This document shows, piece after piece, positions 6,379 to 27,212 of a DNA stretch of 64,000 nucleotides. Position 1 is the stretch's first letter. Every line of letters starts with the position of its first letter. The stretch lies in contig NC_086385.1 in assembly GCF_036588685.1 (NCBI RefSeq), positions 32,821,216 through 32,885,215 on the forward strand, in the 5' to 3' direction. Source of the stretch: Mytilus trossulus. Taxonomy: Eukaryota. The notes beneath the pieces are model-generated. The model was given only the letters and a program-made list of their open reading frames with translations. It made no database searches and was not told the DNA's origin. The position numbers were made by a program, and so were the translations under genes.

Positions 6379-6418
6379 TCGATTAATATAATCTACTAAA
6401 ATATTCCGTAACTCGGAG
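6379..6418 (-). promoter_or_regulatory. Conserved 3'UTR tandem stem-loops (CDE-like), paralog A
   Basis: UCCG-AGUUA-CGGA followed by GAUUA-UAU-UAAUC. The 16-mer GTAGATTATATTAATC is identical in paralog B. Confidence 0.6.
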
Positions 6419-6445
6419 AGTTTGTTATAGTTAATAAATTGTTCA

Positions 6446-6787
6446 CTACATATTGGCTTGCATGGCTTCGTAAGAAACAAGTAAAGATTTTAATGTTAAA
6501 ACAACATCCTTGATTATGATGTAATCACATGAATATCTGTATCTTCTGTCGGTAATCGGCGATTGGTTTGACATGATATCACGTGATTGATATTTCTCTA
6601 TGACAGCATCTGATTGGACGATGGCCATTTGAACATGACACAGCACATCATACAGTTTATTTTCAATGTCAATTATATCCGCTGAAAAGGCACCGTGGTC
6701 GTGCACGTTTTCATTGTTTTTAATCTGTTCCAGGAAAACTGCAGCTGTCGACAACTGTGCGTATGATTCCAAGAATGTTACGGTTAC
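6446..6787 (-). CDS. Paralog A exon 4 (helices B-D, stop)
   Basis: tttttttacag|GTA acceptor. VTVTFLESYAQLSTAAVFLEQ...LYDVLCHVQ...SRDIMSN...DYIIIKD...ANM*. About 35% identical by manual alignment to 27213-27569. AATAAA at 6353-6348. Confidence 0.92.
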   Translation of the reverse strand, partial: VTVTFLESYAQLSTAAVFLEQIKNNENVHDHGAFSADIIDIENKLYDVLCHVQMAIVQSDAVIEKYQSRDIMSNQSPITDRRYRYSCDYIIIKDVVLTLKSLLVSYEAMQANM

Positions 6788-7189
6788 CTGTAAAAAAATA
6801 TAAGTTGAATTATAATGCAACATCGTTTTTAACGTTCATTTTGATTGGATAAAGTCAACTATTTTCATGAAAAATGAAAGTACAAATCTGTATTCGGATA
6901 ATGAACTTTACTTTGACCCAAAACAAAATAGTTACTATCGATATCATCCTATTGTCAACTAGTAAACAGTGGCGGATCCAAAAAAATCATAAGTGGGGGC
7001 CCACTGACTGCCTAAGAGGGGGCTCAGTCCAGTCACGCTTCAGTGATTCCCTATATAAGCAACCAAATTTTTTCCCAAAAAGGAGGGGTCCCGGGCACCC
7101 TGCTCCCCCTAAATCCGCCTCTTGTAACTGAAATGAGAAGTCACATATGCAGTTTCAATTGCAAATGAACACAATAAAGCACAACCTTC

Positions 7190-7425
7190 ATTCTCAATAG
7201 ACAATGCAATATAAAGCAAAACTTATTATTTCTCAATAGCCAATGAAACAACACATACATTTTCAAAAGCCAATGACGTAAAACTTATTATTTCTCAAAC
7301 CCAATGTAAAACGTATATTTTTAATAGCCAATGAAATAAAACTTACATTTTCAATAGTCAATGAAACAAAAATCGCATTTTTAATAGCCAATGAAATAAA
7401 ACTTACATTTTTAAACACCAATGAA
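7190..7425 (+). repeat. About 30-bp tandem repeat overlapping the paralog A exon 3 donor
   Basis: aatagccaatgaaataaaacttacattt-like units, about 7 copies. Confidence 0.8.
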
Positions 7426-7520
7426 GCGTTCTTTTCTGGCATGTGTTCTACTTTGAAACCATCCAAATGTACTCGATCTAACCTACGTCTAATTGCTTGA
7501 ACAATGATTCTCTCATTTGC
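7407..7520 (-). CDS. Paralog A exon 3 (AB loop)
   Basis: tttttcttag|GCA ... AAT|GTAAGT, 114 nt, phase 0-0: ANERIIVQAIRRRLDRVHLDGFKVEHMPEKNASLVFKN. Same length and phase as paralog B exon 3. Confidence 0.88.
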
Positions 7521-9363
7521 CTAAGAAAAAGAAGAATAACACAAAATAAAATTTTTATGTTTGTTGTTTACTATTAAAAAGTAAGAAAATTACACACGTG
7601 CTGACTATATTCAGAATTCAGACGAATCGTAAAAAGAGGTAATATGTATACATGGGAAATTACTGCGCATATACCCTACCAAGACATTATATTGAAGTAA
7701 CCACTCTTTAATCGCTATCTTTAATAAAAGGGTTATTAAAACACCTTCAACTAGGTGCTGCTCACATATTACAGTGGGACTAATGCACCCCTTCTGTCAC
7801 CATTACTATAGAACTCTTTCATATATACATCGACCATTAATCTTTTATTGTTTTCTGTGGTTTTGGTGAGAGTGAGTGCTTGGTTTATTTTCAAACACTT
7901 TGCTCGAATCTACATGTCTTGAATTGTAAATATATATTAAATTCATTTACACTATTCCGAAAGATGTTCCAAGCGCATTTAAGAGAAAGGATTCTAACTT
8001 TGGCTAGTATTATATTTTAAGACATTATGTTACAACCTAGTTATATGTTTGCTTTTTGTGAGTTTGTAAATTAGGGGGTGGGGTGGGGCAACTTCCGAAG
8101 CAAAGTTGTCGGCTCTCCGGACATTCCCGAAGTCCTGCGTTGATTGCCGAGTTTATGAGCTTCAGTCCTTGCTTGGAAGTTGGGGTGGGGTAGGGGTTCT
8201 GGATGGGGTTCTTAAAATCAAGAAATGTCGACCAAGTGAACAGAAAAAAGGGGGAAAATATACCATAAAGTAAAAAATATGACTGGCGGAAAAGAATCAA
8301 TAGTTTTACCGTGCTTAAAATTATAAAGAAGAGAGCATAGTGGGAAAGTAAAATGAAATATATAGTGAAATTTCACAAAAAAATACAAAATATACAGAAA
8401 TGGCCACCTTATACAGACACTTTCTACGGCTTTCTTTTTGTATTACAGTTAAATAAGTTTTCTATAACGATGGTCTTATAGCATTTGTAAATTGTGCCAC
8501 TTGCTGGAGGATGAAAAACACTTCATCCTTGAATGTAAAATAAGCTAAGGGATAATCTATTTGAAAATTGTTTACCTTCTGATAATTGTATGTCTCTTAC
8601 CAAAGATAAAAAGAAAAGAAAAGAATAGCTTAACCGATCTATCATGGAACATGTTAAAAATTTTGGTTCCTTTATAAAATAGTAATTAGTCACCACTACT
8701 GGTGTTTGACGACCTTGACTTGCTGTCGGTACATTGGTCAGAAATAAGGGCAGAAGTCTTATCATTTTTTTTCATGTGTTGATTTCTTTTATTTTTTATT
8801 TATTTATTTGCTATATTATATAAAAAAAGAAGATGTGGTATGATTGCCAATAACAGCACTCTCCACAAGAGACCAAAATGAAACAGAAATTAGCAACTAT
8901 ATGTCACCTTACGGCCTTTAACAAGGAGAAAAGCCCATACCGCATATGTTTGTTTTTATTATAAAATATTTGTTTTTGTCACAATCTAATTATGTTAATA
9001 TGACGGTCAAGATATCATTATATAACACGTGATTAACTTATATAAAATAGGAGGAATAAACAACAGTTACAATACGAGAAGGATATCCTTAATAATATTA
9101 AGAAAATTAATAAAAGTAAATAAACAACAATTATTAATCAATTGAATCCCAACTCTTTTATCTTTATTTTCTTTGAACAAGGTTTAAAGATTGAGTTCCC
9201 CTGTTGTCAGACACTTGTTATAAAATATACGATTTCAGATACTTTTTGTAATATATAATTACTAAACACAGTAATATACAAATAATGAGTCGGACTACGT
9301 CTTTTTTTACAGCTTAGCTAACATCTGAATCTTTTTTTTTAAAAGAAAGATATTTGTACATAC

Positions 9364-9542
9364 GTATTTAATTCTCAGGTTGGTTGCTATGTCGTCTGCT
9401 TCTCGGAGTCTGACGATCAGATCAGAGATTATTTCCGGCTGAGGGGGTAGAGGTGGGCGTAACGTAGAAGATCCACATGGATGTCGCCATCTTTCATTTC
9501 CTGCTGGGAAACAGTCGATGTTACTCACCAAGGAAACAATCG
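9364..9542 (-). CDS. Paralog A exon 2 (end of signal peptide, WRHPCG motif, helix A)
   Basis: Acceptor tatttcag|CG and donor TAC|GTATGT (phase 0). Translates AIVSLVSNIDCFPAGNERWRHPCGSSTLRPPLPPQPEIISDLIVRLREADDIATNLRIKY. Homologous to 28904-29052. Confidence 0.9.
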
Positions 9543-9794
9543 CTGAAATATTAATAAGATTTGATGAAATATCTTATAAGAATTAATGTTAATCATGGTG
9601 GAAACAATCGCTGAAATCAAATGATTAATAATAATTGATGATATATAAAGGAAAACAATTGTCGTAAATCATCGAGGAAACAACAGCTGAAGTATTTAAA
9701 TAGAAATGATAAATTATTAAAATTTATCATATACTTAGATTAGTCAATAAAGTTAAATGTATGTACAATCATATGACAATCAATGATAATTGTT

Positions 9795-9975
9795 TTGTAT
9801 TTAAGTCATCGATGATGGTATCGATATAAGTAATCGATCAATATCATTCATCGACGATACTATCGATGATGGTATTATTATCAGCCATCGAAAATGGTAT
9901 CGATGATGGTATGAATATCAGTCATCGAAAATGGTATCGATATAAGTAATCGATAATGGTAACGGTATCAGTTAT
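9795..9975 (+). repeat. Degenerate atcgatgatggtat tandem repeat in paralog A intron 1
   Basis: Repeated atcgat/ggtat units. Confidence 0.75.
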
Positions 9976-10607
9976 CCTTAATACAAAGACAATAAAATAT
10001 CATCATAAAAAAATCATATATTTTAGACATAATAGTTTTGGTAAATGTTCAGAGGTTGTCGTTTGTTTGTTTGGTTCATAAGTGTTTCTCTTTTTTATAA
10101 AGATAAGACCGTTGGTTTTCTTGTTTAAATGGTTTAACACTAGTAATATTTGGGCCCCTTCATAGCTTGCTGTTTGGTGTGAGCCTAGGCTCCGTACTGA
10201 AGACCGTAAATTAACCTATAATGGTTTACTTTTATAAATTGTGACTTGGATGGAGAGTTGTCTCATTGGCACTCATACCACATCTTCCTATATCTATGAA
10301 ATAAATGACACGCTTTATTTTTCCGGGGAACTTCTAAAATCTTGTAACACTCTCTCAATATCACCGCCTTATTTCATGTTGGAATTGACTCGTAGAATGG
10401 GTTGATAAAAAGTATGAAAGAGGCGAAATATAAGTTGTGGTGGTGGGGTGTGGTGTTGTGGGACTCAGTACTACCATAAGGATTTACATATAGGATAAAT
10501 GCATATACTTTTTGCAAGCATCAGTCCAAACGCCTCTTTAAGAACACGTCTGCATGGTAATTGGTTATAGATGAATGCTTTTGAATAATTAATATATAAA
10601 TACATAC

Positions 10608-10641
10608 CCAAAACCATTAAAATGACCGACTGAAGGTACAT
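10608..10641 (-). CDS. Paralog A (Unpaired/IL-6-like helical cytokine), exon 1: signal peptide start MYLQSVILMVL
   Basis: ATG at 10641, 11 mostly hydrophobic codons plus G, then GTATGT donor (phase 1). Joins exon 2 to give MYLQSVILMVLAIVSLVSNIDC/FP. TATATATA lies about 80 nt upstream. Confidence 0.85.
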
Positions 10642-10689
10642 TATTGCTTGTTTGTTTACTTTTGTTTGATTACTTATATCTTAAAACTG

Positions 10690-10955
10690 TAATTAAAAAA
10701 CTAAAACCAAACTTATGATATATATACATACCTGAAAACTTTCATTAAAAAAAAATTAAAAAGGGGCTTATGCCATAAATGAAGAAATGACTAAGATACA
10801 AGTGACTAGGAACTTGCTATACCACATCATCTCTAATTGTATTCATTAACAACAATAGAGGTTGACGGAAGATACATTTGACGTCATTCTCATCAAATGA
10901 AATCTTAAAACAATGAAGGAAGAAATTAAATAAATCGGACATCCTTTCGGAAACA
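10690..10955 (-). promoter_or_regulatory. Paralog A proximal promoter: TATA box and CRE
   Basis: TATATATA at 10726-10719, Inr-like TTACAGTT about 30 nt downstream, perfect TGACGTCA at 10879-10886. Segment 10831-11030 is duplicated at 11611-11790 with the CRE retained. Confidence 0.6.
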
Positions 10956-11034
10956 AATTTTAACTTTGTCATTGTAGTAACTTTAGTAGTATCCTTTTCA
11001 TGCTTTTTTAATAGTTTTTAAAAGTTATGCTGTT

Positions 11035-11444
11035 TAAAAATACGTCCCCCAAACGTAACAAATATGTTGTCAATAAAAAAATCAAGCATCTTGATAATGT
11101 CCGTTTCAGAGATTTGTTTGAATCAAATTTTTGCAAAGTAGGATTTATCCCTCCCTTAGACAAGATATATACTTGTATCTACGTTGATCATTCTTTTTGA
11201 AATGGAACAAAGCAATACCAACTCTTTCGATTAGTCATTTATTTTGGAATTTGGAATATTTGTGTTAAAAGTGTAGAAAGGTGCTTTATTTCTATTGCAA
11301 GATGAAAGAGTCTTAGATTGAAAGTATTCTAAAAGATCTTTGGATTTTTTAAGCATCCACATCTGATTCACAATACCTATAGAATAGACAGTTTCACCAT
11401 AGCTTATATTAGAAGCCTGGCTTTGATTGCTAATAAAACTGATC
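11035..11444 (-). mobile_element. Second fragment of the same Penelope-like RT
   Basis: Homologous to 14115-14760 (atccacatctgatt, gtaggat.tatccct, tacttgtatctacgtt). Confidence 0.75.
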
Positions 11445-11813
11445 AGTGTACGGATTCAGAACTTTTCATAAAGGGGGTGCTGATTGACATAAGGGGAAGT
11501 GTGCCGCTCCACCCATGCTCCCTATATAATCAACAAAAAAAATTCACACTAAAGGGGGCCGGGCCCCCCAGGCCCCCCTGGATACGCCTATGCTGATGTT
11601 GATAATTCCTCTCTAATTGTAGTCATTAACAACAATACATAATGACGGAAGATCAATTTGACGTCAAATCTTAAAACAATAAAGGAAGTAATTAAAAATT
11701 AAAATCGGACATCCTTTCGGAAATAAATTTTTACTTTGTCATTTAAGTTAAAGTATTCTTTTTGAATAATTTTAAACAGTGATGCAATTTTTACATATTT
11801 TACCTACATGTCA

Positions 11814-11992
11814 CAGTGAAACCTGTTTAAACCGAGCCTCTTTGGGACGGCTTAATATTTTGTTCGATTTTGGCCGATGTTCGGTTTTATCATGTCAACA
11901 ACGCATACAATTTGATATGACGGTTCTTAAGAACATGTTTGGTTAAATAGATTTTTGTTTTATGCGGGATTCGGTTAGGCCAGGTTTCACTG
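11814..11992. mobile_element. MITE CAGTGAAACCTG (second copy 45518-45694)
   Basis: Terminal inverted repeats, TA flanks, two homologous copies of about 180 bp. Confidence 0.8.
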
Positions 11993-13289
11993 TATCTATA
12001 AATAATTGAATAGGATTGGTAGTTAGATTTTCCCCTTGGTTTACACACCGATAAACCATGTTGCCAATTACAATTGTTTTTTTTCTTATTCTACGTGATT
12101 TGTCCACATTTTTTACACGTTAAGATCACTTACAATATCTCGTTGAGGGCTCCGTAGGTGCATGGATGGCCTGTTGCAATGGTACATTTCTGTCTATATC
12201 CATATGTACATGTATCCTTATTTGCACGCGTACATGGCGTACCAAATTTCCTAAATTTTCATTCCGGACAGCCTCTATTACAGGACCTACATATTGTATT
12301 TGTTGGTAATTAGTTCTCGTCTTGAATATGTATACATGAAATATTTGCCACTGGATTTTTTTTTAACAACCAAATATGAATCGGTCTATACATATATGAT
12401 ATTGTAGGTCCATATTGTTAGATTTTAACGTTTCTAGAGAATATTTTTTCTTGTAAGTATTCGGCGATATAAAAGGTTGAAAGAAAACACTATGGACGAA
12501 GTCTTATATTATACATCGTAGAACTTCCTAGTATGTAATTCATTCATAGATATAAGAAGATGCGATATGAGTGTCAATGAGACAACTTTCTATCCAAGTC
12601 ACAATCTGTCAAAGTAGACCATTAAAGGTCAAAGTACGGCCTTCAACATTGAAGTCTTAGCTCACATCAAATGTACTCGTTATCCTTGGGTTACTAAGAT
12701 ATATAAATGAAAACTAACAATCTAATTAAAATATTGATCTCTGATTACGTTATACTACATATGAGTAGTATAACGTGATCTCTGAGAGATTGGAAAACTA
12801 AAATAAAGACAAAAACATCAGAATTGTGTGTTTTGTAGAGAATGAAAATCAAATAATCTTTTTAGAGGGTCTATTGGGTATGTATTAAAATAGAGAATAC
12901 TGTGAAAATTTAACAGAAAATGGACCCCAAATAATAAAGTATAGACTGGGACAATTGACATACAAATTAAAGAACACAGAATTGAAAGACCTTATCAAGG
13001 TCGTCTTTTATAGTCAAAAAGTTAATTCAGTCTTATTCAAACTTATTTTCTGTTTATAGGTGATATTCATTTACTGCAACTGTCATTCTTGCTTTTCTCT
13101 GACTGTTTATGAAGACTTTACACAAAATCCATTGGATTTTGGATGTGTACTGATGGAAAATTTAATCAAGAGAGCATGTACGAGCTTTTTTCTTTTAATA
13201 ATTGTTGCTATGTTACATATTTGTTTAGGTGCCATTTTTTTCTATTAGTTGTTATTGACTATGAAATAGCTGTCAGTAAAAGTGGCTAA

Positions 13290-14960
13290 ATAGGAAAACA
13301 TACGAATAACAGTACACAAGACACAACATAAAAATAAGGACTACGCAACACAAACCCTACTAAAAACGGGGTGGTCCCAGCTGCTCCGGAAAGGTAAGCA
13401 GATCCTGCTCCACATGTGATACCCGTCGTGCTACAAACCCGGTAAATAGTCTTGTTCGGTAAGTCACATTCGTAAATAGTGAAGTTACGACACAAGGAAC
13501 ATCTCCGATAGCATCTGTGAAACTGATACTTAGTACTCCATAACGGTCAACCAACTCGCTATGGCGTCCGTACAATTTACGAAGAGATGATTTCAAATTT
13601 AACATTCGGAACTCTTGGTTTAAAAACTTCCTTTTAAGTATCAACCCGCTATCAAGGAAACTGGGATAAGAAGGCAAGCCCGAGAATATCGTATCAATTG
13701 TGAGATACATGTATATAATATTCCGTATGCAGGTGTATGCTGGAATGTTGCTATATAGCAATGGAAAGTTCACAATTAGAAAGCTGAAATCATCTGTTTT
13801 ATCGTAAAGTTTTGTTTTCAAGCAACCCTTATTGTCAATTTCTAGATGTAAGTCAAGATAAAGGGCAGGTTTTACTGTATCTGTTGTATCCTTTACCTCT
13901 AGTGTGATGGAATCGATGCGTACAACATAGTCACCCAGTGTTTTATCATTTAGTCAGAGATCATCTATATATCGGAATGTAAGGTTAAAGAATAAAGCTT
14001 ACTTCTTTTCTTTCTTTTTAGAAGTTCATGTTTGAAGTCAGCCTAATAAGAATAAAGAAACAAATCGGCTAGAAGAAGGGCACAGTTGTTTCCCATTGGA
14101 ATGCCGATGGTTTGTTGAAAAAAAAACGTCCTCCAAACATTTTACTAGTATCACGCATTTTGATAATGTCAGTTTTAGAGAATTTTTTGTTTGAATCAGT
14201 GTGAATTTTTACAAAGTAGGATGTATCCCTTCCTAATATAAAAAGAAGATGTTATATGATTGCCAATGAGACAACTCTCCACAAGAGACCGAAATGACAC
14301 AGACATTAACAACTATAGGTCACGATACTTGTATCTACGTTTGTTGTTCTATGTAAGAAACAAAGCAATACCAACTCTTAAGCCTCAGTTTCAGAAACTA
14401 GAGGACTATTGGTAATCTCATTGTTCGTACACCTAAATGAACATAACATTACGTCATTGGTTGCATTTCATTTGTTTAGAACGTTTTTAACCAATCACAA
14501 CGTTGTGATGTACGCTTTTCCATATATTACCCATAGTGCATTATATTTTGAAACGGCGAATTTGTCATTTAGTATGGAATGGGAATACTTGTGTAAAGTG
14601 TGAAATGTAAAAATACTTTTGCAAGATGAAAGAGTCCGGCTTAGATTGTATGTATCTTTGGATTTTTTTAGTATCCACATCTGATTTATACCATCCTCTA
14701 TAATAGGCAGTTTCACAATAAGTTTTAAGCCCGGCTTTGATTTCTGTTAAAATTGATGCTTAGAAAGAGATTTCGTCGAACACTTACATGTAGAAGACTC
14801 AGCAATATAGCTTTGTTTGCAAGGACACTTATGAAATAAAGATACCCAATAAGTGATGGAAGATCCATGCAGTTCATCTTTGGTTGTCGAACTTGAAATT
14901 TTAAAGGCACATAGAACAGTATGTCTGCTATTGCCACGAATACAAATAAAACAAATCATC
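13290..14960 (-). mobile_element. Penelope-like retroelement RT, degenerate, with nested insertions
   Basis: Frameshifted motifs NQMWILK, GIPMGNNCALLLADLFL, FRYIDD, KLYDKTDDFSFLIVNFP, LRKLYGRH. Insertions at about 14235-14325 and 14380-14545. Confidence 0.85.
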
Positions 14961-15261
14961 CTTAACCATTCAACTACTGGATATTATATCTATGGAAAAT
15001 ACTGATTACTAGTACATACACCTGTACATATATGACACAAAGAGTAAGCTTGATTTGTCAGAAAGCAATGAAAGGGTAACATTTAAGTTTTTTAAAAGTC
15101 AAAACTTTTTTAATCGATTTATCATTATGAGTTTCTACTGACTCTAATTATTTTTTTTAATGTTATCGTTAATAATGAAAAAGTAATTAGTTTCTAATGT
15201 ATTTTAAATGTATTTTTGGTGTTTAATAGACTTACAAAAATGTATATAAATATAATCTTCG

Positions 15262-17176: not shown

Positions 17177-17178
<2 letters not shown>

Positions 17179-17231
<53 letters not shown>
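17179..17231 (+). repeat. (TA)n(GA)n compound microsatellite
   Basis: Seen directly. Confidence 0.95.
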
Positions 17232-17236
<5 letters not shown>

Positions 17237-18069: not shown

Positions 18070-18335
18070 TGCAGCCATTTCGCGTTTTCTCTTCTTTTTT
18101 TTCAAGCGAAATCGGGAAATTGGGAAATTGGGAAATCGGGAAATCGGGAAATCGAAAAATGAAGAAGTCAACAAAGCAAAATGGGAAATAGATTTCTCGA
18201 TTTCGCGTTTTCGCGCTTTCTCGCATTCTCGCGATTTCTCAATTTCTCGATTTTTTGATTTCCCGATTTCCCGATTTTTTTATTTCTGGTTTTCGCGAGT
18301 GCAAAGTGAAAGAAGTCAACGCAAAATCGGGACAC
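18070..18335. repeat. Inverted aaatcggg/cccgattt 8-mer arrays (MITE-like)
   Basis: gaaatcgg units at 18108-18155 mirrored by cgatttc units at 18195-18280. Confidence 0.65.
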
Positions 18336-18355
18336 TTAATATATGATTCAATAGA

Positions 18356-19917
18356 TTTGAACAAGTGAGGTGACCCCAGTGCATATCTTATCAAATTTGA
18401 CTTTTTTTCCGTGTTACGGACGAAAAATTCGGCCTTTAAGAATACTTACCCCAGAAATTCTTTACCCTCACGTTGTAGTACTGTCCAAAAACTACTCATG
18501 AGAGCAGCTGCTGTAATGCCTAGCCATAAAGAACTACCGAAACAATGGGCCGGAAAGTGGGCGCCCCAAATGCGTATTTTATCGAATTAAGGCTTATTTC
18601 CGTATTTCGGACGCAATTTTCGTCCTTTAGGAATGCTTACCCAATAAATTATTTGCCCCCTCGTTGTAGTACTATCCAATAGCTATTTGTAACAGCAGAG
18701 TGTATAATCCCTAGCCATAAAGAACTGCCGGGGCAATGGGTTTGAACAAGTGAGGTGACCCCAGTGCATATCTTATCAAATTTTACTTTTTTTCCGTGTT
18801 ACGGACGAAAAATTCGGCCTTTAAGAATACTTACCCCAGAATTTTTTTACCCTCACGTTGTAGTACTGTCCAAAAGCTACTCATGAGAGCATCTGCTGTA
18901 ATGCCTAGCCATAAAGAACTACCGAAACAATGGGCCGGAAAGTGGGCGCCCCCAATGCGTATTTTATCGAATAAAGGCTTATTTCCGTTTTTCGGACGCA
19001 ATTTTCGTCCTTTAGGAATGCTTACCCAATAAATTATTTGCCCCCTCGTTGTAGTACTATCCAATAGCTATTTGTTACAGCAGAGTGTATTATCCCTAGC
19101 CATAAAGAACTGCCGGGGCAATGGGTTTGAACAAGTGAGGTGACCCCAGTGCATATCTTATCAAATTTGACTTTTTTTCCGTGTTACGGACGGAATATTC
19201 GGCCGTTAAGAATACTTACCCCAGAAATTCTTTACCCTCACGTTGTAGTACTGTCCAAAAGCTATTCATAAGAGCAGCTGGTGTAATACCTAGCCATAAA
19301 GAACTACCGAAACAATGGGTCGGAAAGTGGGCGCCCCCAATGCGTATTTTATCGAATAAAGGCTTATTTTCGTATTTCGGACGCAATTTTCGTCCTTTAG
19401 GAATGCTTACCCCAGAAATTCTTTGCTCCCTCCTTGTAGTACTATCCAATGGCTATTTGTTAGAGCAGAGTGTATAATCCCTGGCCATAAAGAACTGTCG
19501 GGGCAATGGGTTCGAACAAGTGAGGTGACCCCAGTGTATATCTTGTCAAATTTTACTTTTTTTCCGTGTTACGGACGAAAAATTCGGCCTTTAAGAATAC
19601 TTACCCCAGAAATTCTTTACCCTCACGTTGTAGTACTGTCCAAAAGCTATTCATAAGAGCAGCTGGTGTAATGCCTAGCCATAAAGAACTACCGAGACAA
19701 TGGGTCGGAAAGTGGGCGCCCCCAATGCGTATTTTATCGAATTAAGGCTTATTTCCGTATTTCGGACGCAATTTTCGTCCTTTAGGAATGCTCACCCCAG
19801 AAATTCTTTGCCCCCGCGTTGTAGTACTATCCAATAGCTATTTGTTAGAGCAGAGTGTATAATCCCTAGCCATAAAGAACTGCCGGGACAATGGGTTTGA
19901 ACAAGTAAGGTGACCCT
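18356..19917 (+). repeat. 385-bp dimeric tandem repeat, 4 copies
   Basis: tt(t/c)gaacaagt(g/a)aggtgaccc starts at 18356, 18741, 19126, 19511 and 19896. Each unit is two diverged subunits of about 190 bp. Confidence 0.95.
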
Positions 19918-20438
19918 GTTTAAAAAGTTGTGTTGTGGGTACTAGTTTAGTATATCATGACAAGTTTATTTTACATCAACATTCTATTCTTGGTCGTTAA
20001 TATGAGTTTTGAAAACCATAAATGTGGATTAAACATGCGTTCATCACATCTGAACTTAACAGATAATTGAATTGTCATCATGATATTATGGTAAATGCTA
20101 ATTACAAAACTGTAAATATGTATTGAGTTAGAAATTTGCAAATTTAATTTTTGTTAATTGGATATAAAACTTTATTTATTTTCTATAAAAATCTTGCAGT
20201 GAACAAAAAAGTAAAAAACTATGAAAGGGAAAAAAATTGTCGCTCAAGTAGTTTACCAAACGCAATTGCAGGATGACGAATTGCAGGATAGATTTTTATA
20301 AACAGAATTGCAGGATAGCTTGACACTAGTGAAATTGTCCTAGGTTAAGATAGTACCTGGGAAATCCACTAATAAAAATAAGTGTACCAATTTATGATTG
20401 ACCCTTGTGGAAATTTTATTTGTGGTCAGCATAAGTTG

Positions 20439-23400
20439 TAGTCTCGATAACCCAGACGCATATTTAAATATAGCGTCTGGGGTGATTAACCGGACTGGTC
20501 AGATATTTATAGGGGGCGTAACAAATAATTAAATATAGAACATATCTATAAATAGCACTTCCGGTATCCCCATTCTATTTAAAAATAATTAATACAAAGT
20601 AACGTTACATGTTAAAAGAACGATCGAAAACTGTAATTGATAGCGGTGGTCTTTTTTCCTGAATTTTGTGACACATGTAAAGAGAAAATAATTAAAAATT
20701 AAGACAGAATTTTTTTTCGTGGGAAAAATTTGGCTGATTATATAAAGAAACAATGTAGCATGACTGTAGAGTGCCCTCATTATAACAAGGTCTGGATCAG
20801 CCACTGTTTGTGTATAGGGGGTATGCGCTAAGAGAGCCCAGGGATCCGTATAGGTGGACCGTTGTACATAAAGCCATACAATATACCCTAATTTTCTGGT
20901 GAGTTATATTTTCTCCGACATGTATCCCGAACGGCCTATAATCTAGGACCTCATCTTTATATTTATTGTCATTTTTTCAGTCCTGAACATTTAATACCAA
21001 TATTTACCACAAGACGATAACCAAGCAACCCAAAATCAATCTTTTTTGTATATTATAACACACCACGTTTAATATCCTCTTATCTTCATACTTAAAATGT
21101 CATTTTTCTATATTTTTGTATTATAGCATACTCTCTATTCTATGAAATATTTGCCACTTGACGTTATAAGCAACCAACAGTCGGTATATTGATCTATATT
21201 TTATTCACATTAGTCTGAATTCTTTATTTTCCCCCTTTTTTCTTAGTTTTGTGTCGTTATTCTTAATATTTCTGTAAATCCTTGTTATAATTTATGCTTT
21301 CCTTTTTATATAATCTTTCAGATAACTGACGCACTTACCTTACTCGAAAAGCACACATCAAGTTGCGTTTATGGAAAGAAAAACAACTCATACAAATCAT
21401 GACTAAGATTTCAATGTAGAAAATCCTCCATAACAACTTATTACTGGCAGATCAGTGAGATCATACAATAAGCCAACTTTTCATTTACAAAATTAACTGA
21501 TCTTAAAATTGCAAACGACAGAATAGTCTGAATGTTTCACAATAATCTATATCGCTTAATCCTTTTGGGAAGAAAACATTTAGGGACCAATCTTCACACA
21601 ATACCACTTTGTCAGTCTCTGTGTCCATGAAGAAATACATAAGTTAACCAGTCATTCATGAAACCCAATTTAATACTCCTTGAAAACATGTTTGAATCAT
21701 TCACATGGAAAAGATGGAATGGGATGTGTCCTATACTGCAGAAAAAATAACTGAAAAGTGTATTCTCCTACTACAAACTATTATGCTGAGTTCACAAGTA
21801 ATACTTATTTGATTCCAATATCCATCATGTATTTAAGGGCAGCTTCATAAAAATTCTCCTGTACATGTGAACCTTTATATAAAATAAGGAGATTGGTATG
21901 GTTGCTGATGAGGCAACAACCTAGCAAAGTTCAAATGACATGGATGTTCGCAAATATAATCACTGCTCGACCTTCAATATTAAGAAAACTCCATACCATA
22001 TAAATAACTGAGAATGGCCATCATGTAACTGAGATACAATTCAAACGTGAAAACTGTTAAATTTCTTATATGATTTTTAATTTGTTTAATTTCTCTGACA
22101 TATCTGACAACAATGTGATTCTTGATTTTTGTTTTATTTACTTAATGAATGTCTGTGTACCTTTTTTCGCTTTATGGTTGCTGTCAGAATAATGTTTATA
22201 CTGTGATTATAATGATTGCTGGCAGCTTCAGTAATTCAAAACAAATCTTTGAATCTTATTTTTCCTTATAAAATTGAAGCTGTTTATGATACAATGAAAT
22301 TTCAAGTATTATAGATTTTTTTTTAATTCTTCACATTTTACACATAATATCTGTGTCAAGAAATCTTCATTGGTTTGTCTACAAAAGAAAGTAAATGTTA
22401 AAATTATATTAATTTTTGGTCACCAGCATAGCATATATGAAAAACAAAATGTTTGGAAAAAACATCATATATAAATATAAATTTTAAAATGTCTTGGTGC
22501 AAGCTGAATCTCGCTACGGCAGGCGAGATTATCTCGCAGTGTTGATGACACAACCCATGGGTGGCATTGGGTTGTTTCCTGTTCTTTTGTCGGGTTGATG
22601 TCTCTTTGACACATTCCCTGTTTGTATTCTCTATCAAAATCATGCATGAACTTTTATCATTATTGAAGGCCATACAGTTGCCTATAAGTGCTCACATCCA
22701 CCTTGTTTGAACTTGGGGTGGATAACTGTCTCATTGGTATTCATACCGCGTCTTCTTATTTGTATAATGTTGACCTTTTGGTACTTTTATTCTCATTTTT
22801 TGTTTAAGTCAACAGTATGTCTTCTTCATTATGTTGATGTCTACTTTTGGTAATGTATATCACTGGGATCAGTCACCGGTTATTGCCTCATTGAGACCTC
22901 CTTTCATTGATGCTGGATCTATTGTTTTGCATCAAATCGAATTTTCATTGTTTTTCTCATGCCATGGTTTTATTTTAAGGTTTAGAAAGCCAATTGGTAT
23001 ATATTCACCGACAACATTGCATGTATTCTTTTATGATTTTTTTTTAGTGTAGAAAAAATGTCTTTTAAAAGTGCAAAAAAAGTATTGTCCAGTTGACCAG
23101 TTCAGACTTTGTTTACTAACAGTATATCTAAATTACTTTTTATAACAACGTGTCCCACTTCTTCTATGTTTGTAGAAGCTAAATGCATTTGTTTTAAAAA
23201 AAATCGAGCACAAATCATTTTCACCGTTTGGTGTATGTTCAAATTGGCATCTTCTAGATATATTTTGTTTGGTTTTCTTCTGCTAATGGTTTTGGATTGC
23301 GTTCCCTCTTTTAAATGTGTACAACATTGCGCATCATTCCTTCCCTCCCTTTTTTTTAACACATATCAAAATGCGAACTCCATTATACAATGCAGACAGA

Positions 23401-24002
23401 TATAAAAAAACTTATCCTGGATGAAGTTCATATTTCATAGCACTTTTCAATAAAGTATTTATAAAGTTAAAGATACTACAAATCAACCACAAAATGTATT
23501 TATAGCGTACACACGACTGTTCGAGTGGTCCCAGTCAATACAAAAATTGCCATTTATTATATATTATTAACTTGCTTACGTAGCACGGACATGCATGAAA
23601 GAATATAACTACTCGGTGTTTCAGGTTGTATTAAAATTTATGTAACAGTTTGTGTTGTGTTATATCATGATTATATCTTACCAAAGTTTGATGTGCTGTT
23701 ATTTTCCTTGCGGTGATGGAAGCCATGCTGTCTGGTATTTTCCACGACTTGTATGTCGTCACAGAAAAATATAAATAGCTTTAAACAACAATCGGTACAC
23801 TCGGGCTTTTCAATAGTATTATCGTAATATAATTTCTTCCGAAGTCAATAACCAACTTCTTGGTTATTCGTCTTGGACATTATCTTTAAATACAAGCTAA
23901 AAATTCCGATACTATTCCGAATGTCATAAATTACCATTTTTATATCACTTGTCATCCAGACGCTCTACTTTGAAAAATAAAGCGGCTGGATGATCGAGAC
24001 TA
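20439..24002. mobile_element. Degenerate DNA transposon, Academ(H)-like, 9-bp TSD
   Basis: TIRs TAGTCTCGAT...CCAG(A/C)CGC at both ends and a perfect TSD CATAAGTTG (20430-20438, 24003-24011). Subterminal CCAGACGC...GCG(T/G)CTGG hairpins, decayed coding-like interior, nested repeats. Confidence 0.75.
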
Positions 24003-25264
24003 CATAAGTTGACCAGTAAAACTTACAACAATTTGAATTTAGTGATAAGAAAATTTTACATCTTTATTTAGACATCCTTTGATCAGTACGCCACAAAATA
24101 AATCCTATGTCATTTGGTCTTTTGTGAAGCATTGTCTCATTGATATGGCAAACATACCACACGTTTTTCATATTAATCATACATATGCATAACAAGACAA
24201 CTGAACTGCAAATAATATAAAACAATTCTCGAAATAAAAGTTATAACGATAAATGTAAACAGTTGAGTTAAGCTGATACCGAAAATAAAATGCTGCCCTT
24301 GAAATGGTAATTTTAAGGACATTTTGAAATTTTTGGTTATATACCCTGAATATTATTACAGATATAGAAAACTGTGCATATATTGCAATACTGTTCAGCA
24401 AATAAAGATATACAATTAAGTCAGCATGATCAAAATTGTCAATTGACCACTGATTGAGTTATTGCCATTAAAGTCATTTTTTTTAACTTTTTTTCGTAAA
24501 AATTTCTTTTCACAAAAATCTCTGAATCTACTGAGACAAATTTAACCAAAAAAGATCACAATCATCATTATGGTATTTATTTTAAAAGTGTGTTCGATGA
24601 CCACAACTTACATGGTAGACATGGCTACAAATAGAGCATAGCGGTAACGCAGTTTTTGGCTTATATCTTTGAATGAAACTAGGGAAAAGTATAATGGTTG
24701 CATTATTTCATGCATCAATTGTAATAAAAAAAAATATCAGGTGAGCGACACATTCTCAATGGCTCTCTCGTCAAACGATTTATACGTTAACGTGTTTAGA
24801 GCTAGACTGAACAAAAATGGCCATCTCAAGTGAAACAATTCAAGAGAGAATAAGTTCGATTGCGTGACCTATAAAGTATTGCGAAATCCAATGTGGAGAT
24901 TGACCTCTGTTGAACTTTATTTGAGGTCATTCCAATCTAATTAAAACCCGATCCCTAGTCGCTCCGTCACGACATATCTCAAGATGTGAGATTGGGTTTT
25001 AATCCGATTGTGGTCACCTGATAACTGAATTGACCAACAGACTTTACAACGATTTAAGATTAGGTAGACTATATTTATATGAAAATTCCCTTTGAAATAC
25101 TTTTATCAGCCTGACTTAGCTTATCAATGCTGTCATATCTTTATTAAATTACGAAAAGTTTACATGCTAACTTTGACATCCTTAACTTTGTAAAATTTAA
25201 CAACAGATATAAAAATCTATCATGATTAAGAAGGTCTGGCTGGATGTTACAAAATAGAGAATAA

Positions 25265-25542
25265 GGGAGCTACCATTTGATTGTTATGGGTTGGCTAGGA
25301 TGAAAAATTTTGTCCTGCATTTTTTTTAGCTGTTATCTCTGTCCTGCCTTTTTATTTTTCACTCTGTTCGGTCCTGCCCTTTTTTCCCCAGTTTATCCTG
25401 ACTTTTTTTTACCTAAATTGTCGTCCTGACTTTTTTTTTTGCAGGTGTCTCATTCTGCCTTTTTTTTCACTCAAAATTCCTGTCCTGCCTATTTTTTTCA
25501 AATTTCATCCTAGCCTCCAATAAAGATCAAATGGTAGCTCCC
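25265..25542. mobile_element. Harbinger/Tourist-like MITE GGGAGCTACCATTTG (also 32901-33178, 57133-57378, partial 53540-53606 and 56090-56163)
   Basis: Perfect TIR, TAA flanks, internal tcctgcc repeats. Confidence 0.8.
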
Positions 25543-26479
25543 TAACTGTTACAGGCAAAATAAATATAAGAAGATTGGATATGAGTGCCAATGAGACAAA
25601 GTCACAATTTCACTTCAAAAGGGGAGAGGTTGTTCTTTTTGAATTCCGAGTAAGAGTTTTCTTTTTCTAGTTTTTCGACGCTATCAATCAAATTATTTTA
25701 TTCACAATATAACATTATAAAAGTATGGGGAAAACCAGGATTCAGAATATATTTTTTGTCATTTGCTTGAAAACAATATTTTTTATCAAATTGGTAATCA
25801 TAACATTTTCTAGGGAAAACAATAACCACACCCCCGTAAAGTTAAATGGTCGTTCGTTAACCAATATAAAAATATGTGGTATGATTTTCAATGGTGCAAC
25901 TCTCCACAATATGCCAACATGACATAGGAATTACCAACTACAGGCCAACATGCGGCCTTCAACAATGAGCAAAGCCCATTCCGCATAGTTAGCTATAGAA
26001 ATCCACGAAATGGAAAATGTAAAACAATATTAATTCAAACGGGAAAAGTAGCAGCCTAATTTACGCACAAAAAATGAACACACTTGTATATGTAATACAG
26101 CAACAAATAATAACCACTGAATTACATGTGTACACTATTGCACAATTCCTTGTGCATGTTGAGTTGAAATCGAGACAGAGAAATATCTATTGTACCGTAT
26201 AGAAACAACCCCATTTTTTAAATTGCAATCGGGGACAGAGATTTTCAGATAATTGGGTTAACTTTTTTAAAATAAGGTTTTGTGAAACAACAATCGACAA
26301 ACATCGGGTGTCTCCGCTTCTCTCCGTCTATCCGTTTGATGGAAGTACGGAATCGACCGAGTTGTGACGAATGACTTTACTAGCAATCGGCAATACTCGG
26401 GTAAATCCGCTTCTCTCAATCGATCGATCTATCCGTAAGATGGAGGTACGGAATAGAACGAGTTGTGACGCATGGCGAA

Positions 26480-26956
26480 ACAGAACATAACATAGTAAAA
26501 AATATAAACATTTATTACAAAAGTATAAAATTCATACAAAAATGTGAGCATTATATATAAATATATATATACATAAACATTCTTTATCAAATAAACGTTT
26601 TCGATTAATATAATCTACCCTTTGATATATCCATAAACTTGGACGTTTTAAAATAATGAATTGTAAACTCTTTGGTAAACAGGAATAAATGAATTAATTG
26701 AATAAAATATGTCTTTCACAATAATGTAGTCACGTGAATGCAAAAAGCTGTAATTGTCAATTGAATGTATTTGATTGGACATGATATCACGTGATGGAAC
26801 ATTGTCAACAACTCTGCCAAGTTGAGATAAAGCTGCTTGAATTTTACAAAGTACACTATGTATATAATGTTTTATCCATTTTTGTAAATTCTCCAATAAA
26901 CGTATTCTCGTGAGTCTGATGATACATCGTTTCGTTATCAATAACTTGTTCTAGGT
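26480..26956 (-). pseudogene. Tandem duplicate of paralog B terminal exon (5'-truncated, frameshifted) plus 3'UTR
   Basis: Close copy of about 27056-27515. It starts mid-exon at LEQV without the native acceptor and has a 4-nt insertion near 26859-26862 (ctatgtatata versus ctatata). Confidence 0.9.
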
Positions 26957-27167
26957 AAACTTTACTAGGAATCGGTAATCCTCGAGTGTCTCCGGTTCTC
27001 TCCATCTATTCGTTAGATGGAGATACGGAATCAACCGAGTTGTGACAAATGCCAAAACTGAACATAACATGGTAAAAAATATAAACATTTATTACAAAGT
27101 ATAAAATTCATACAAAAATATTAACATTATATTTACATAAACATTCTTTATCAAATAAAACTTTTTT

Positions 27168-27209
27168 GATTAATATAATCTACCCTTTGATTTATCCATA
27201 AACTTGGAC
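27168..27209 (-). promoter_or_regulatory. Conserved 3'UTR tandem stem-loops (CDE-like), paralog B
   Basis: UCCA-AGUUUA-UGGA followed by GAUUA-UAU-UAAUC. Also kept in the duplicate at 26603-26644. Confidence 0.6.
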
Positions 27210-27212
27210 GTT

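What the first reader, a model, noticed from the sequence alone, without database searches (positions are those of the whole stretch)
6379..27209. Identical Roquin/Regnase-type triloop hairpin in the 3'UTRs of two ~35%-identical paralogs
Seen: the UTRs of A and B are otherwise hard to align, yet both carry GUAGAUUAUAUUAAUC (6396-6381, 27183-27168, also 26618-26603). It folds as a 5-bp stem GAUUA/UAAUC with a UAU triloop. A second hairpin just upstream shows a compensatory change (UCCG/CGGA versus UCCA/UGGA). Established: Roquin and Regnase-1 destabilise vertebrate cytokine mRNAs (TNF, IL6, ICOS) through short stems with Py-Pu-Py triloops. Inference: an ancient post-transcriptional decay circuit for cytokines is conserved in molluscs, which independently supports the cytokine call.
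Basis: partly seen in the sequence, partly recalled or inferred. Interest (0 to 1): 0.8.

Follow-up and report, generated by a model that had tools for sequence, protein, structure and literature searches.

The report
Conserved 3'UTR module in mussel cytokine-like genes
Four anciently diverged mussel genes for IL-6/Unpaired-like secreted proteins carry the same two-part RNA element just after their stop codons, which looks like a preserved switch for controlling these messages, but whether the vertebrate Roquin/Regnase decay machinery reads it is unproven.

Summary
The 16-mer GTAGATTATATTAATC occurs exactly six times in the 1.3-Gb genome. Every copy lies in sense orientation downstream of a last exon of one gene family: A, B and pseudo-exon B' in the window, and D1, D2 and E on another contig. 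Between the A/B and D/E clades the flanks are 32-40% identical and coding DNA shares runs of at most 9 nt, yet the 16-mer is invariant.

Eight to eleven nt upstream lies a stem-loop whose stem differs between paralogs but stays paired: 3 of 5 pairs changed on both sides. Spliced contigs place A's copy in a mature 173-nt 3'UTR. The public protein for A folds as a long-chain four-helix cytokine.

The Roquin/Regnase reading is only partly supported. For it:
- UAU triloop closed by A-U
- tandem loop layout
- ROQ and Zc3h12a genes present in the genome

Against it:
- the stem is 5 bp, and the relaxed CDE consensus needs 6-8
- predicted folding is 0.7-2% in A and B
- the stem never covaries
- the upstream loops are not U-rich ADE loops

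Most likely this is a family-specific, two-part post-transcriptional control element whose 16-18-mer is read base by base. No UTRs from distant species could be fetched.

The parts
6381..6396 (-). Invariant 16-mer GUAGAUUAUAUUAAUC of gene A. It could form a 5-bp stem with a UAU triloop. The conserved block extends to 6379 (R-A).
6405..6417 (-). Upstream stem-loop (hairpin 1) of A: UCCG-AGUUA-CGGA, 8 nt before the 16-mer.
6276..6448 (-). 3'UTR of gene A: stop TAG at 6446-6448, AATAAA at 6287-6292, and the furthest RNA contig ends at 6276.
6449..6787 (-). Coding part of A's last exon (113 codons), 100% identical to the C-terminus of XP_063412529.1 (Mytilus trossulus).
7407..7519 (-). Preceding coding exon of A, joined to the last exon in spliced contigs. 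The intron is 6788-7406, GT..AG on the minus strand.
9363..9548 (-). Upstream coding exon of A (signal peptide end and helix A) as far as contigs reach. The intron is 7520-9362.
27168..27183 (-). Invariant 16-mer of gene B, 32 nt after the first base of the stop TAA (27213-27215).
27194..27209 (-). Hairpin 1 of B: GUCCA-AGUUUA-UGGAU, 10 nt before the 16-mer (11 nt if the outer G.U pair is not counted).
27216..27569 (-). Coding part of B's last exon (118 codons).
26603..26618 (-). 16-mer of B', the truncated duplicate of B's last exon. It is not an independent copy.
26629..26644 (-). Hairpin 1 of B', identical to B's.
26651..26955 (-). B' pseudo-exon. It lacks the acceptor and the first part of the exon, and a 4-nt insertion near 26870 breaks the frame.

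Best explanation
This is a family-specific, two-part cis-regulatory RNA element in the 3'UTR of one subfamily (A, B, D, E) of secreted IL-6/Unpaired-like four-helix genes of Mytilus.

Part 1 is a stem-loop of 4-7 bp. Its loop begins R-G-U. Its stem sequence is free to change as long as it stays paired.

Part 2 lies 8-11 nt downstream. It is an invariant 16-18-mer, GUAGAUUAUAUUAAUC-R-A, that can close into a weak AU-rich triloop hairpin.

My reading is that a trans-acting factor recognises the 16-18-mer base by base. That factor could be an RNA-binding protein or a small RNA. Hairpin 1 would act as a structural partner, and the pair would set the stability or translation of these cytokine-like mRNAs.

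Shown:
- presence in a mature mRNA (gene A only)
- strict association with the family
- invariance across deep paralog splits
- compensatory changes in hairpin 1

Inferred:
- that a factor binds
- that the output is decay or translational control
- that the readout is sequence-specific rather than shape-only

I put the general claim, a selected RNA-level regulatory element, at about 0.8. I put the specific claim, base-specific readout not explained by Roquin shape recognition alone, at 0.55.
For: Distribution:
- There are 6 exact copies in 1.3 Gb and 0 of the reversed control pattern. All six are in sense orientation downstream of family last exons.
- One-mismatch variants are at background level: 107 hits including the 6 exact, against 119 for the control.
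- A covariance model of the module finds only the six seeds genome-wide. In the window plus five other loci, including those of paralogs F, G and H, it also finds only seeds, and the next best hit scores 17.7 bits.
- Chance 18-mer matches in metagenomes score 21-44 bits, against 64-78 for the seeds. None of those 80 loci encodes a family exon.

Selection:
- Between the A/B and D/E clades the flanks are 16-19 of 47-53 identical.
- Coding DNA is 55-57% identical, with longest shared runs of 6-9 nt.
- The 16-mer is 16 of 16 identical.
- Protein path lengths between lineages are 1.0-1.6 substitutions per site.

Structure of hairpin 1:
- 3 of 5 pairs changed on both sides and 90% of cells are paired.
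- Versions with the 3' partner slid by 1-3 columns pair in 12-55% of cells.
- RNAalifold predicts both hairpins without guidance.
- The chance of such a stem at that distance is 0.079 for 4 bp or more and 0.008 for 6 bp or more.

Expression: spliced contigs in 3 of 4 runs laid carry A's UTR through to 6276, and no difference is listed inside 6381-6417.
Against: - Only four independent lineages from one genome carry the module, so no formal covariation test such as R-scape is possible.
- D and E share nearly the same hairpin 1 (15 of 16 columns). The covariation therefore rests essentially on A versus B versus D/E.
- In A, an alternative local fold (AACUC/GAGUU) competes with the homologous hairpin 1.
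- In E the module lies 1073 nt after the stop. No RNA data show that it is part of E's mRNA.
- Paralogs F, G, H and C lack the module.
- No trans-factor, complementary small RNA or effect on mRNA level has been shown.
- The other Mytilus runs are only about 2-3% diverged, so they add little power. One difference each in X1 and X2, and three in X22, were not listed.
Confidence: 0.55

Rival explanations
1. The 16-mer is a Roquin/Regnase-type constitutive decay element, and hairpin 1 acts as an ADE-like partner. The mussel ROQ domain recognises the stem-loop shape and recruits deadenylation, or a Zc3h12a RNase cleaves the RNA. On this model an ancient cytokine-mRNA decay circuit is conserved in molluscs.
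For: - The loop is UAU (Y-R-Y) with an A-U closing pair. This YAU plus A-U combination is reported for the CSF3 and UCP3 CDEs.
- UCP3 CDE I is made of A-U pairs only, and any Watson-Crick closing pair works (PMC6294493, passages).
- A hexaloop stem-loop lies 5' of a triloop stem-loop in Ox40 (PMC5603727, passages).
- An ADE stem-loop sits next to a second, cleaved stem-loop in C. elegans ets-4 and is read by the RLE-1 ROQ domain (PMC9371910, passages).
- Regnase-1 prefers YRY-loop stem-loops (PMC13732794, passages).
- The genome has one ROQ-domain locus (95.6 bits). A 60-residue stretch of it aligns almost identically to human Roquin-2. It also has two Zc3h12a RNase loci.
- In D1 and D2 the hairpin gains 3 bp beyond a 1x1 mismatch and is predicted to form with probability 0.83-0.89.
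- The host genes look like IL-6/IL-11-type cytokines.
Against: - The contiguous stem is 5 bp. The relaxed consensus is 6-8 bp, and a 5-bp stem already repressed significantly less.
- The TNF core UCYRYGA and the three Y-R pairs are absent.
- Predicted fold probability is 0.02 in A, 0.007 in B and 0.25 in E. The high-confidence CDE set used a cut of more than 5%.
- Roquin binding is described as essentially sequence-independent. Yet 5 of 5 stem pairs, the loop and three 5' flanking bases never vary, while the adjacent stem changed 3 of 5 pairs over the same history.
- The hairpin 1 loops are AGUUA, AGUUUA, GGUAAA and GGUAAU. They are not GUUUUA/GUUCUA. [quoted passage not shown] G at position 2 in all four loops, and A at position 5 in D/E (equivalent to U13), fall outside that.
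- Every metazoan has Roquin, so its presence shows only feasibility.
Confidence: 0.2
2. This is a DNA-level element. The inverted repeat GATTA-TAT-TAATC would be a binding site for a dimeric DNA-binding protein, for example a homeodomain-type factor. It would act as a downstream enhancer, silencer or terminator for these genes.
For: - The arms are a perfect 5-bp inverted repeat rich in TAAT/ATTA cores.
- Invariance of every base suits a DNA-binding protein.
Against: - The adjacent element evolves by compensatory double changes that keep pairing. That is a signature of single-stranded folding, not of a duplex site.
- Conservation is asymmetric: GUA lies 5' of the repeat and R-A 3' of it.
- In A, B and D1/D2 (three of the four lineages) the module sits 32-52 nt after the stop, inside the transcribed UTR.
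- No factor was tested. The homeodomain resemblance is recalled from memory, not taken from any call.
Confidence: 0.07
3. The element has no function of its own. The shared 16-mer would be a leftover of common descent, or would have been spread by gene conversion among paralogs.
For: - All six copies are homologous by position.
- B/B' and D1/D2 are recent duplicates, with flanks 47 of 53 and 52 of 53 identical.
Against: - Between clades the flanks sit at 32-40% identity, and no coding run exceeds 9 nt, yet the 16-mer is intact.
- The clusters lie on two different contigs, C13 and C4.
- A conversion tract of under 20 bp without flanking identity, repeated across four loci, is implausible (inference).
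Confidence: 0.05
4. The motif is coding. In one frame it reads V-D-Y-I-N in all copies, so it could belong to a small overlapping or alternative C-terminal peptide.
For: The frame translation gives VDYIN followed by a stop within 3-6 codons in A, B, D and E.
Against: - The frame relative to the main ORF differs: offset 52 in A and D against 32 in B.
- Stops lie 6-9 codons upstream in D and E.
- The RNA contigs show no splice joint inside A's UTR.
- A chance bacterial ORF also reads KVDYINQ.
Confidence: 0.02

Closest known systems
Roquin constitutive decay element (CDE): TNF, CSF3 and UCP3 type
   Same: - A short stem capped by a Y-R-Y triloop in the 3'UTR of a cytokine-type mRNA.
- YAU loop with an A-U closing pair, as in CSF3 and UCP3.
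- An AU-only stem, as in UCP3 CDE I.
- It occurs in tandem with a second stem-loop.
   Different: - 5 contiguous bp instead of 6-8.
- No UCYRYGA core.
- Low predicted folding in two of four lineages.
- The stem sequence is frozen rather than free to covary.
- Three 5' bases and two 3' bases outside the stem are conserved as well.
- No ROQ binding has been shown.
Ox40 ADE-like plus CDE-like tandem, and C. elegans ets-4 ADE plus RCE
   Same: - The architecture matches: a 5-6-nt-loop stem-loop immediately 5' of a second small stem-loop in a 3'UTR.
- The nematode case shows that ROQ-dependent stem-loop control exists outside vertebrates.
   Different: - The ADE loops are U-rich (GUUUUA/GUUCUA). 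Here the loops are AGUUA, AGUUUA, GGUAAA and GGUAAU, and only R-G-U is shared.
- The spacer here is 8-11 nt.
Regnase-1 target stem-loops (for example the Il6 3'UTR)
   Same: A YRY triloop stem-loop in the 3'UTR of an IL-6-family-like gene. Zc3h12a-type RNase genes are present in the genome.
   Different: No cleavage has been shown. Regnase-1 shows little sequence preference in vitro (PMC9371910 introduction), which does not explain an invariant 16-mer.
Sequence-specific 3'UTR sites (miRNA target sites, linear RBP motifs)
   Same: Base-by-base invariance over 16-18 nt and a fixed position in the UTR.
   Different: - No antisense exact copy exists in the genome (all 6 copies are sense).
- I could not match any known motif or miRNA. 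That comparison was from memory only and no database was available.
- A covarying structured partner is attached, which is unusual for a plain linear site.

Membership tests
Roquin CDE (relaxed consensus, Braun et al. 2018) | Lies in the 3'UTR of a mature mRNA | tested here: met
   Spliced contigs of 3 runs cover 6276/6325/6344-6783 of gene A. For B, D and E this rests only on position and poly(A) signals.
Roquin CDE (relaxed consensus, Braun et al. 2018) | Tri-nucleotide loop Y-R-N, with U preferred at position 3 | tested here: met
   The loop is UAU in 6 of 6 copies. Consensus taken from passages of PMC6294493.
Roquin CDE (relaxed consensus, Braun et al. 2018) | Stem of 6-8 Watson-Crick base pairs | tested here: not met
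   There are 5 contiguous pairs (GAUUA/UAAUC), and the sixth position is an A x R mismatch. D1 and D2 add 3 bp beyond the mismatch. E may also (by eye). A and B add 1.
Roquin CDE (relaxed consensus, Braun et al. 2018) | Appreciable folding probability in context (more than 5% used for the high-confidence set) | tested here: inconclusive
   A 0.02, B 0.007, B' 0.11, D1 0.89, D2 0.83, E 0.25.
Roquin CDE (original TNF-type consensus) | Core UCYRYGA with three Y-R pairs in the upper stem | tested here: not met
   The core here is UAUAUUA, and the upper pairs are A-U, U-A, U-A.
Roquin CDE | Shape rather than sequence is what is conserved, so the stem tolerates or shows compensatory change | tested here: not met
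   5 of 5 pairs never vary. The neighbouring helix has 3 of 5 pairs with changes on both sides.
Roquin CDE | Bound by the ROQ domain, with Roquin-dependent decay | not testable with these tools
   Only feasibility is shown: one ROQ locus (95.6 bits), nearly identical to human Roquin-2 over 60 residues.
Roquin ADE (hexaloop) | U-rich hexaloop GUUUUA/GUUCUA on a 5-8-bp stem | tested here: not met
   The loops are AGUUA (5 nt), AGUUUA, GGUAAA and GGUAAU, on stems of 4-7 bp. Consensus.
Regnase-1 target stem-loop | Stem-loop with a Y-R-Y loop, cleaved by a Zc3h12a RNase | tested here: inconclusive
   The loop criterion is met (UAU). Cleavage cannot be tested. Two Zc3h12a loci are present.
Any curated RNA family (Rfam 15) | Match to a covariance model | tested here: not met
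   0 matches at E up to 10 on A's UTR. On D1's UTR there are 2 sub-threshold snoRNA hits on the opposite strand, at 12.6 and 15 bits against gathering scores of 40 and 39.
Long-chain class I helical cytokine (host gene, not the RNA element) | Secreted four-long-helix up-up-down-down bundle resembling IL-6, IL-11, CNTF or LIF | tested here: met
   AlphaFold2 model of the public protein for gene A: pLDDT 89.8, pTM 0.83. All of the 46 Foldseek rows shown (ranks 1-50) are long-chain helical cytokines or hormones or engineered variants of them, but with weak E-values of 0.05-0.6. TM-score normalised to target is mostly 0.6-0.79. Sub-threshold Pfam hits: IL11 in 2 of 45 and Unpaired in 1 of 45 members. 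Receptor binding was not tested.

The most novel reading that the evidence does not exclude
The module is a lophotrochozoan counterpart of the vertebrate ADE-plus-CDE tandem. On this reading mussel Roquin, and/or a Zc3h12a RNase, binds the two stem-loops and keeps IL-6/Unpaired-like cytokine mRNAs short-lived. Helical cytokines and their stem-loop decay circuit would then have been coupled before protostomes and deuterostomes split. The frozen stem sequence would reflect a second, overlapping reader, as described for AU-rich CDEs that double as AREs.
Probability: 0.17. Interest if true: 0.85.

Novelty: new variant of a known kind. Interest (0 to 1): 0.55.

Why it matters
Almost nothing is known about how invertebrates restrain cytokine messages. 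The ligands of the mollusc gp130/IL6R-JAK-STAT axis are themselves undescribed. One 2026 survey reports IL6 only in vertebrates but IL6R back to Mollusca (PMC13203501, abstract seen in the listing).

This finding offers a compact, 40-nt, experimentally tractable RNA element attached to four IL-6/Unpaired-like genes. One half is constrained by structure and the other by sequence. It makes a concrete question testable: is stem-loop-mediated decay of cytokine mRNAs, by Roquin/Regnase or something else, older than vertebrates?

It also gives a handle for pulling down the responsible factor from mussel haemocytes.

Tried and rejected
- **UTRs from other species.** A protein scan of metagenome contigs with A's last exon found no relative. 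An exact 18-mer scan of metagenomes gave at least 119 stretches, of which 80 were fetched. All 80 look like chance: covariance-model scores were 21-44 bits, no family exon was found by tblastn, and the best hit lies inside a bacterial-type ORF. No distant ortholog UTR was seen.
- **Diverged copies in the genome.** The covariance model found only the seeds (with 150 of 890,110 candidates scored, so this is a lower bound). One-mismatch variants are at control level. I read the one near the F/G/H cluster (C4:78323627). It has no family exon and no hairpin 1.
- **A transposon in E's 1-kb gap.** Rejected, because the 1028 nt are single-copy. Two GTAGA-like stretches inside the gap were seen by eye and not pursued.
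- **Trimmed alignment for the model.** MAFFT misplaced hairpin 1 in alignment A4, so I used A2. In A2, A's 3' arm is shifted by one column because its loop is 5 nt. This causes the 3 unpaired cells counted.
- **Pfam on the last exons and on full-length relatives.** Nothing reached threshold.
- **Known RNA-binding or splicing motifs.** I compared against SECIS, Pumilio, Musashi, ARE, CPE, Smaug, CFIm UGUA and splice-site readings from memory only. None fits all copies, and no tool tested them.
- **Papers.** No paper on Roquin targets in molluscs was found. One search was badly framed. One search found 28 papers holding both words, and none of the 12 listed was relevant by title. No paper on a bivalve Unpaired-like ligand was found.
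- **Supplements.** They were closed and not requested. Braun et al.'s supplementary CDE lists might show whether 5-bp or mismatched stems occur among validated CDEs.
- **Joined exons.** Searches used single exons. The fold used the public RefSeq protein for gene A that one search returned.

Full report
**Observation.** The 16-mer GTAGATTATATTAATC is present exactly at 6381-6396, 26603-26618 and 27168-27183, all on the minus strand. One search found 3 matches at up to 2 mismatches, and none of 100 shuffles reached 3. Each copy follows a stop codon of a paralogous last exon. The motif starts 52 nt after the first base of A's TAG, and 32 nt after B's and B''s TAA. The copy at 26.6 kb is not independent. 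It belongs to B', a tandem duplicate of B's last exon that lacks the acceptor and the first part of the exon and carries a 4-nt frame-breaking insertion. A and B last exons are 35-38% identical as protein. The upstream hairpin and its compensatory difference are also as described: UCCG/CGGA in A and UCCA/UGGA in B.

**The UTR is real.** I laid contigs of four coded public runs on window 6100-9900. Three small runs (X1, X2, X3) each hold one contig that joins 9363-9517/9548, 7403/7405-7519 and 6276/6325/6344-6781/6784. The skipped parts end CT..AC on the plus strand, which is GT..AG on the gene's strand. These runs therefore contain spliced RNA of gene A. The motif sits in a mature 3'UTR of about 173 nt. 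The furthest contig ends at 6276, 11 nt past AATAAA at 6287-6292. Nine UTR positions differ in one or more runs, and none of the listed differences falls in 6381-6417. For X3 all 11 differences of the contig are listed. For X1 and X2 one each is unlisted, and for X22 three. These runs are only about 2-3% diverged, so this adds little power. No RNA evidence was obtained for B, D or E, because the single read-laying run was used on A.

**Genome-wide picture.** The assembly is 1.3 Gb in 541 contigs, and the window is C13:32821216-32885215. It holds six exact copies of the 16-mer and none of the reversed control pattern. The other three copies are on contig C4.
- Two follow the last exons of near-identical tandem paralogs D1 and D2, again 52 nt after the stop.
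- One lies 1073 nt after the stop of paralog E.
- The intervening 1028 nt of E is single-copy, so it is not an obvious transposon.

A profile of seven last exons finds 8 intact family last exons in the genome (A, B, D1, D2, E, F, G, H), plus B' and one fragment with a stop. The module follows 5 of the 8, which is 4 of 7 distinct lineages. F, G and H lack it within 1.5 kb. The distant window paralog C also lacks it. One-mismatch variants occur at background level: 107 hits including the 6 exact, against 119 for the control. I read the only one near a family cluster, and it is unrelated. A covariance model of the module (R1) recovers only the six seeds genome-wide. That is a lower bound, because 150 of 890,110 candidates were scored.

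**Anatomy.** Eight to eleven nt upstream of the 16-mer, every copy has a stem-loop.

| Copy | 5' arm | Loop | 3' arm |
|---|---|---|---|
| A | UCCG | AGUUA | CGGA |
| B | GUCCA | AGUUUA | UGGAU |
| D | UCUUGA | GGUAAA | UCAAGA |
| E | UUCUUGA | GGUAAU | UCAAGAA |

- On alignment A2, 3 of 5 pairs of this helix changed on both sides and 90% of cells are paired. The unpaired cells come from A's shorter loop, which shifts its 3' arm by one column.
- Versions with the 3' partner slid by 1-3 columns pair in 12-55% of cells.
- RNAalifold predicts the same two helices without guidance.
- In random sequence of the same composition, a Watson-Crick stem with a 5-6-nt loop ending 8-11 nt before a fixed point appears with probability 0.079 for 4 bp or more and 0.008 for 6 bp or more. 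These settings were chosen after seeing the data, so the numbers are only indicative.
- Only the loop's R-G-U and one U-A pair are constant.

The second helix, inside the 16-mer, never varies, so it gives no evidence for or against pairing. The conserved block runs on as R-A, making 18 nt.

**Selection.** Between the A/B and D/E clades the 47-53 alignable flank columns are 32-40% identical. The coding DNA of the last exon is 55-57% identical, with longest shared runs of 6-9 nt. The 16-mer is 16 of 16. It is therefore the longest stretch of identity these genes share, coding sequence included. In a tree of 26 C-terminal domains the supports were:
- A with B: 94/89
- D with E: 95/90
- F, G and H together: 100/98
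- D/E weakly with two scallop proteins: 83/83

Path lengths between the four lineages are 1.0-1.6 substitutions per amino-acid site. The tree used 7 window exons and 19 database proteins. The other hits were left out. Retention by descent without selection, or by conversion tracts under 20 bp between two contigs, is implausible. That last step is inference.

**The genes.**
- A's last exon is 100% identical to the C-terminus of XP_063412529.1, an uncharacterised 222-aa protein of Mytilus trossulus. This also identifies the genome.
- A profile search found 328 clusters at E up to 1e-3.
- The 20 clusters I looked up are all unnamed proteins. They come from four Mytilus species, three oysters, a scallop, an ark clam, two gastropods, two beetles, a planthopper, a bee and an amphipod. 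Two clusters had no source name.
For the fold I used that public protein with 44 relatives.
- The model has pLDDT 89.8 and pTM 0.83, with four long helices after a signal-like helix.
- All of the 46 Foldseek rows shown (ranks 1-50) are long-chain helical cytokines or hormones or engineered variants of them: IL-11, IL-6, CNTF, prolactin, GH, LIF, G-CSF, IL-27 and OSM. E-values are weak (0.05-0.6), and TM-score normalised to target is mostly 0.6-0.79.
- Pfam gives only sub-threshold hits: IL11 in 2 of 45 members (best 2.7e-5) and Unpaired in 1 of 45 (8.8e-4).

The cytokine call is supported by the predicted fold, not by the UTR motif.

**Comparison with Roquin/Regnase elements.** I read passages, not whole papers.

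From Braun et al. 2018 (PMC6294493):
- The TNF-derived consensus is a YRY loop with three Y-R pairs.
- The relaxed consensus is a 6-8-bp stem with a YRN loop.
- A 5-bp stem already repressed significantly less.
- Any Watson-Crick closing pair works.
- UCP3 CDE I is all A-U.
- CSF3 and UCP3 prefer YAU with an A-U closing pair.
- Binding is 'essentially sequence-independent'.

From the other papers:
- Janowski et al. 2016 (PMC5603727): ADE hexaloops are GUUUUA/GUUCUA, G9, U11 and U13 are critical, and the Ox40 ADE-like stem-loop lies 5' of a CDE-like stem-loop.
- PMC9371910: in C. elegans ets-4 an ADE stem-loop, bound through the RLE-1 ROQ domain, sits next to a second stem-loop that REGE-1 cleaves.
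- PMC13732794: Regnase-1 prefers YRY-loop stem-loops, and the TNF CDE core is UCYRYGA.

Against this background the mussel element matches on four points:
- location in a 3'UTR
- loop type (UAU)
- closing pair (A-U)
- tandem layout

It fails on stem length and on the TNF core. Predicted folding is mixed: A 0.02, B 0.007, B' 0.11, E 0.25, D1 0.89 and D2 0.83. D gains 3 bp beyond a 1x1 mismatch. The hairpin alone has -1.3 kcal/mol. The upstream loops do not fit the ADE.

The most telling point is evolutionary. Two small stems sit side by side and share the same history. One drifted through compensatory changes, as a shape-read element should. The other, together with its loop and flanks, did not change at all. 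That argues for base-specific reading of the 16-18-mer, or for a second overlapping reader.

The genome does encode the candidate factors. There is one ROQ-domain locus (95.6 bits), and a 60-residue stretch of it aligns almost identically with human Roquin-2. There are also two Zc3h12a RNase loci. This shows feasibility only.

**Other checks.** Rfam has no match at E up to 10 on A's UTR, and only two sub-threshold hits on the opposite strand of D1's UTR. The motif reads VDYIN in one frame in all copies. However, the frame offset to the main ORF differs between paralogs, and upstream stops intervene. No paper on Roquin targets in molluscs or on a bivalve Unpaired-like ligand was found.

**Verdict.** This is a genuine, selected, two-part 3'UTR element private to one subfamily of mussel IL-6/Unpaired-like genes. 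It works most plausibly as a docking site that controls mRNA stability or translation. It resembles the Roquin/Regnase tandem stem-loop systems in layout and loop type. It is not a member by the tested criteria, and Roquin remains one candidate reader at about 0.2.

**Limits.**
- All evidence comes from one genome and four independent lineages.
- RNA evidence exists for A only.
- Paper supplements were closed.

Noticed in passing
window 26488-27215 (minus strand): B's last exon is followed 565 nt downstream by the truncated, frameshifted duplicate B', which has its own module and AATAAA. A read-through transcript of B would carry two modules.
   Followed up: partly
L011:413-1485 (minus); G000:C4:81637698-81638725: In paralog E the module lies 1073 nt after the stop, across a single-copy 1-kb stretch. 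That stretch contains two further GTAGA-like AU-rich stretches and an AATAAA about 560 nt after the stop. It is unclear whether E's mRNA includes the module.
   Followed up: partly
L014 and L015, first ~100 nt after the stops of paralogs G and H (C4:78.34-78.36 Mb): G and H lack the module. Each has a different 6-bp hairpin with an 11-nt loop right after the stop (AAUGCA/UGCAUU and GCAAAC/GUUUGC), followed by AU-rich stretches vaguely like the 16-mer core. This may be a separate or degenerate UTR element.
   Followed up: no
window 6987-7115 and 8767-9020 (introns of gene A): Contig depth runs from dozens (X2) to hundreds of thousands (X22), with many loose ends. These are high-copy repeats inside A's introns.
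   Followed up: no
whole family (proteins P0002-P0151): The gene family is widespread in molluscs and arthropods: 328 clusters at E up to 1e-3. All 18 named clusters among the 20 looked up are uncharacterised proteins, and two had no source name. The family has an IL-6/IL-11-like predicted fold and sub-threshold IL11 and Unpaired Pfam hits. It is a candidate protostome gp130-type ligand family.
   Followed up: partly
window 10609-10641 (minus): By comparison with XP_063412529.1, A's start codon and first 11 residues (MYLQSVILMVL) appear to lie in a separate small exon about 1 kb upstream of the 9.5-kb exon. The contigs laid did not reach it.
   Followed up: no
G000:C4:6300661-6304057: A one-mismatch variant of the 16-mer (GTAGATTATATTGATC) recurs 12 times within 3.4 kb. 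This looks like a tandem repeat array unrelated to the gene family.
   Followed up: no
G000:C13:33770150-33770329 (L026): A weak family-like fragment (E 9.2e-4, one TAA inside) lies about 0.9 Mb from the window on the plus strand. It may be a decayed paralog.
   Followed up: no
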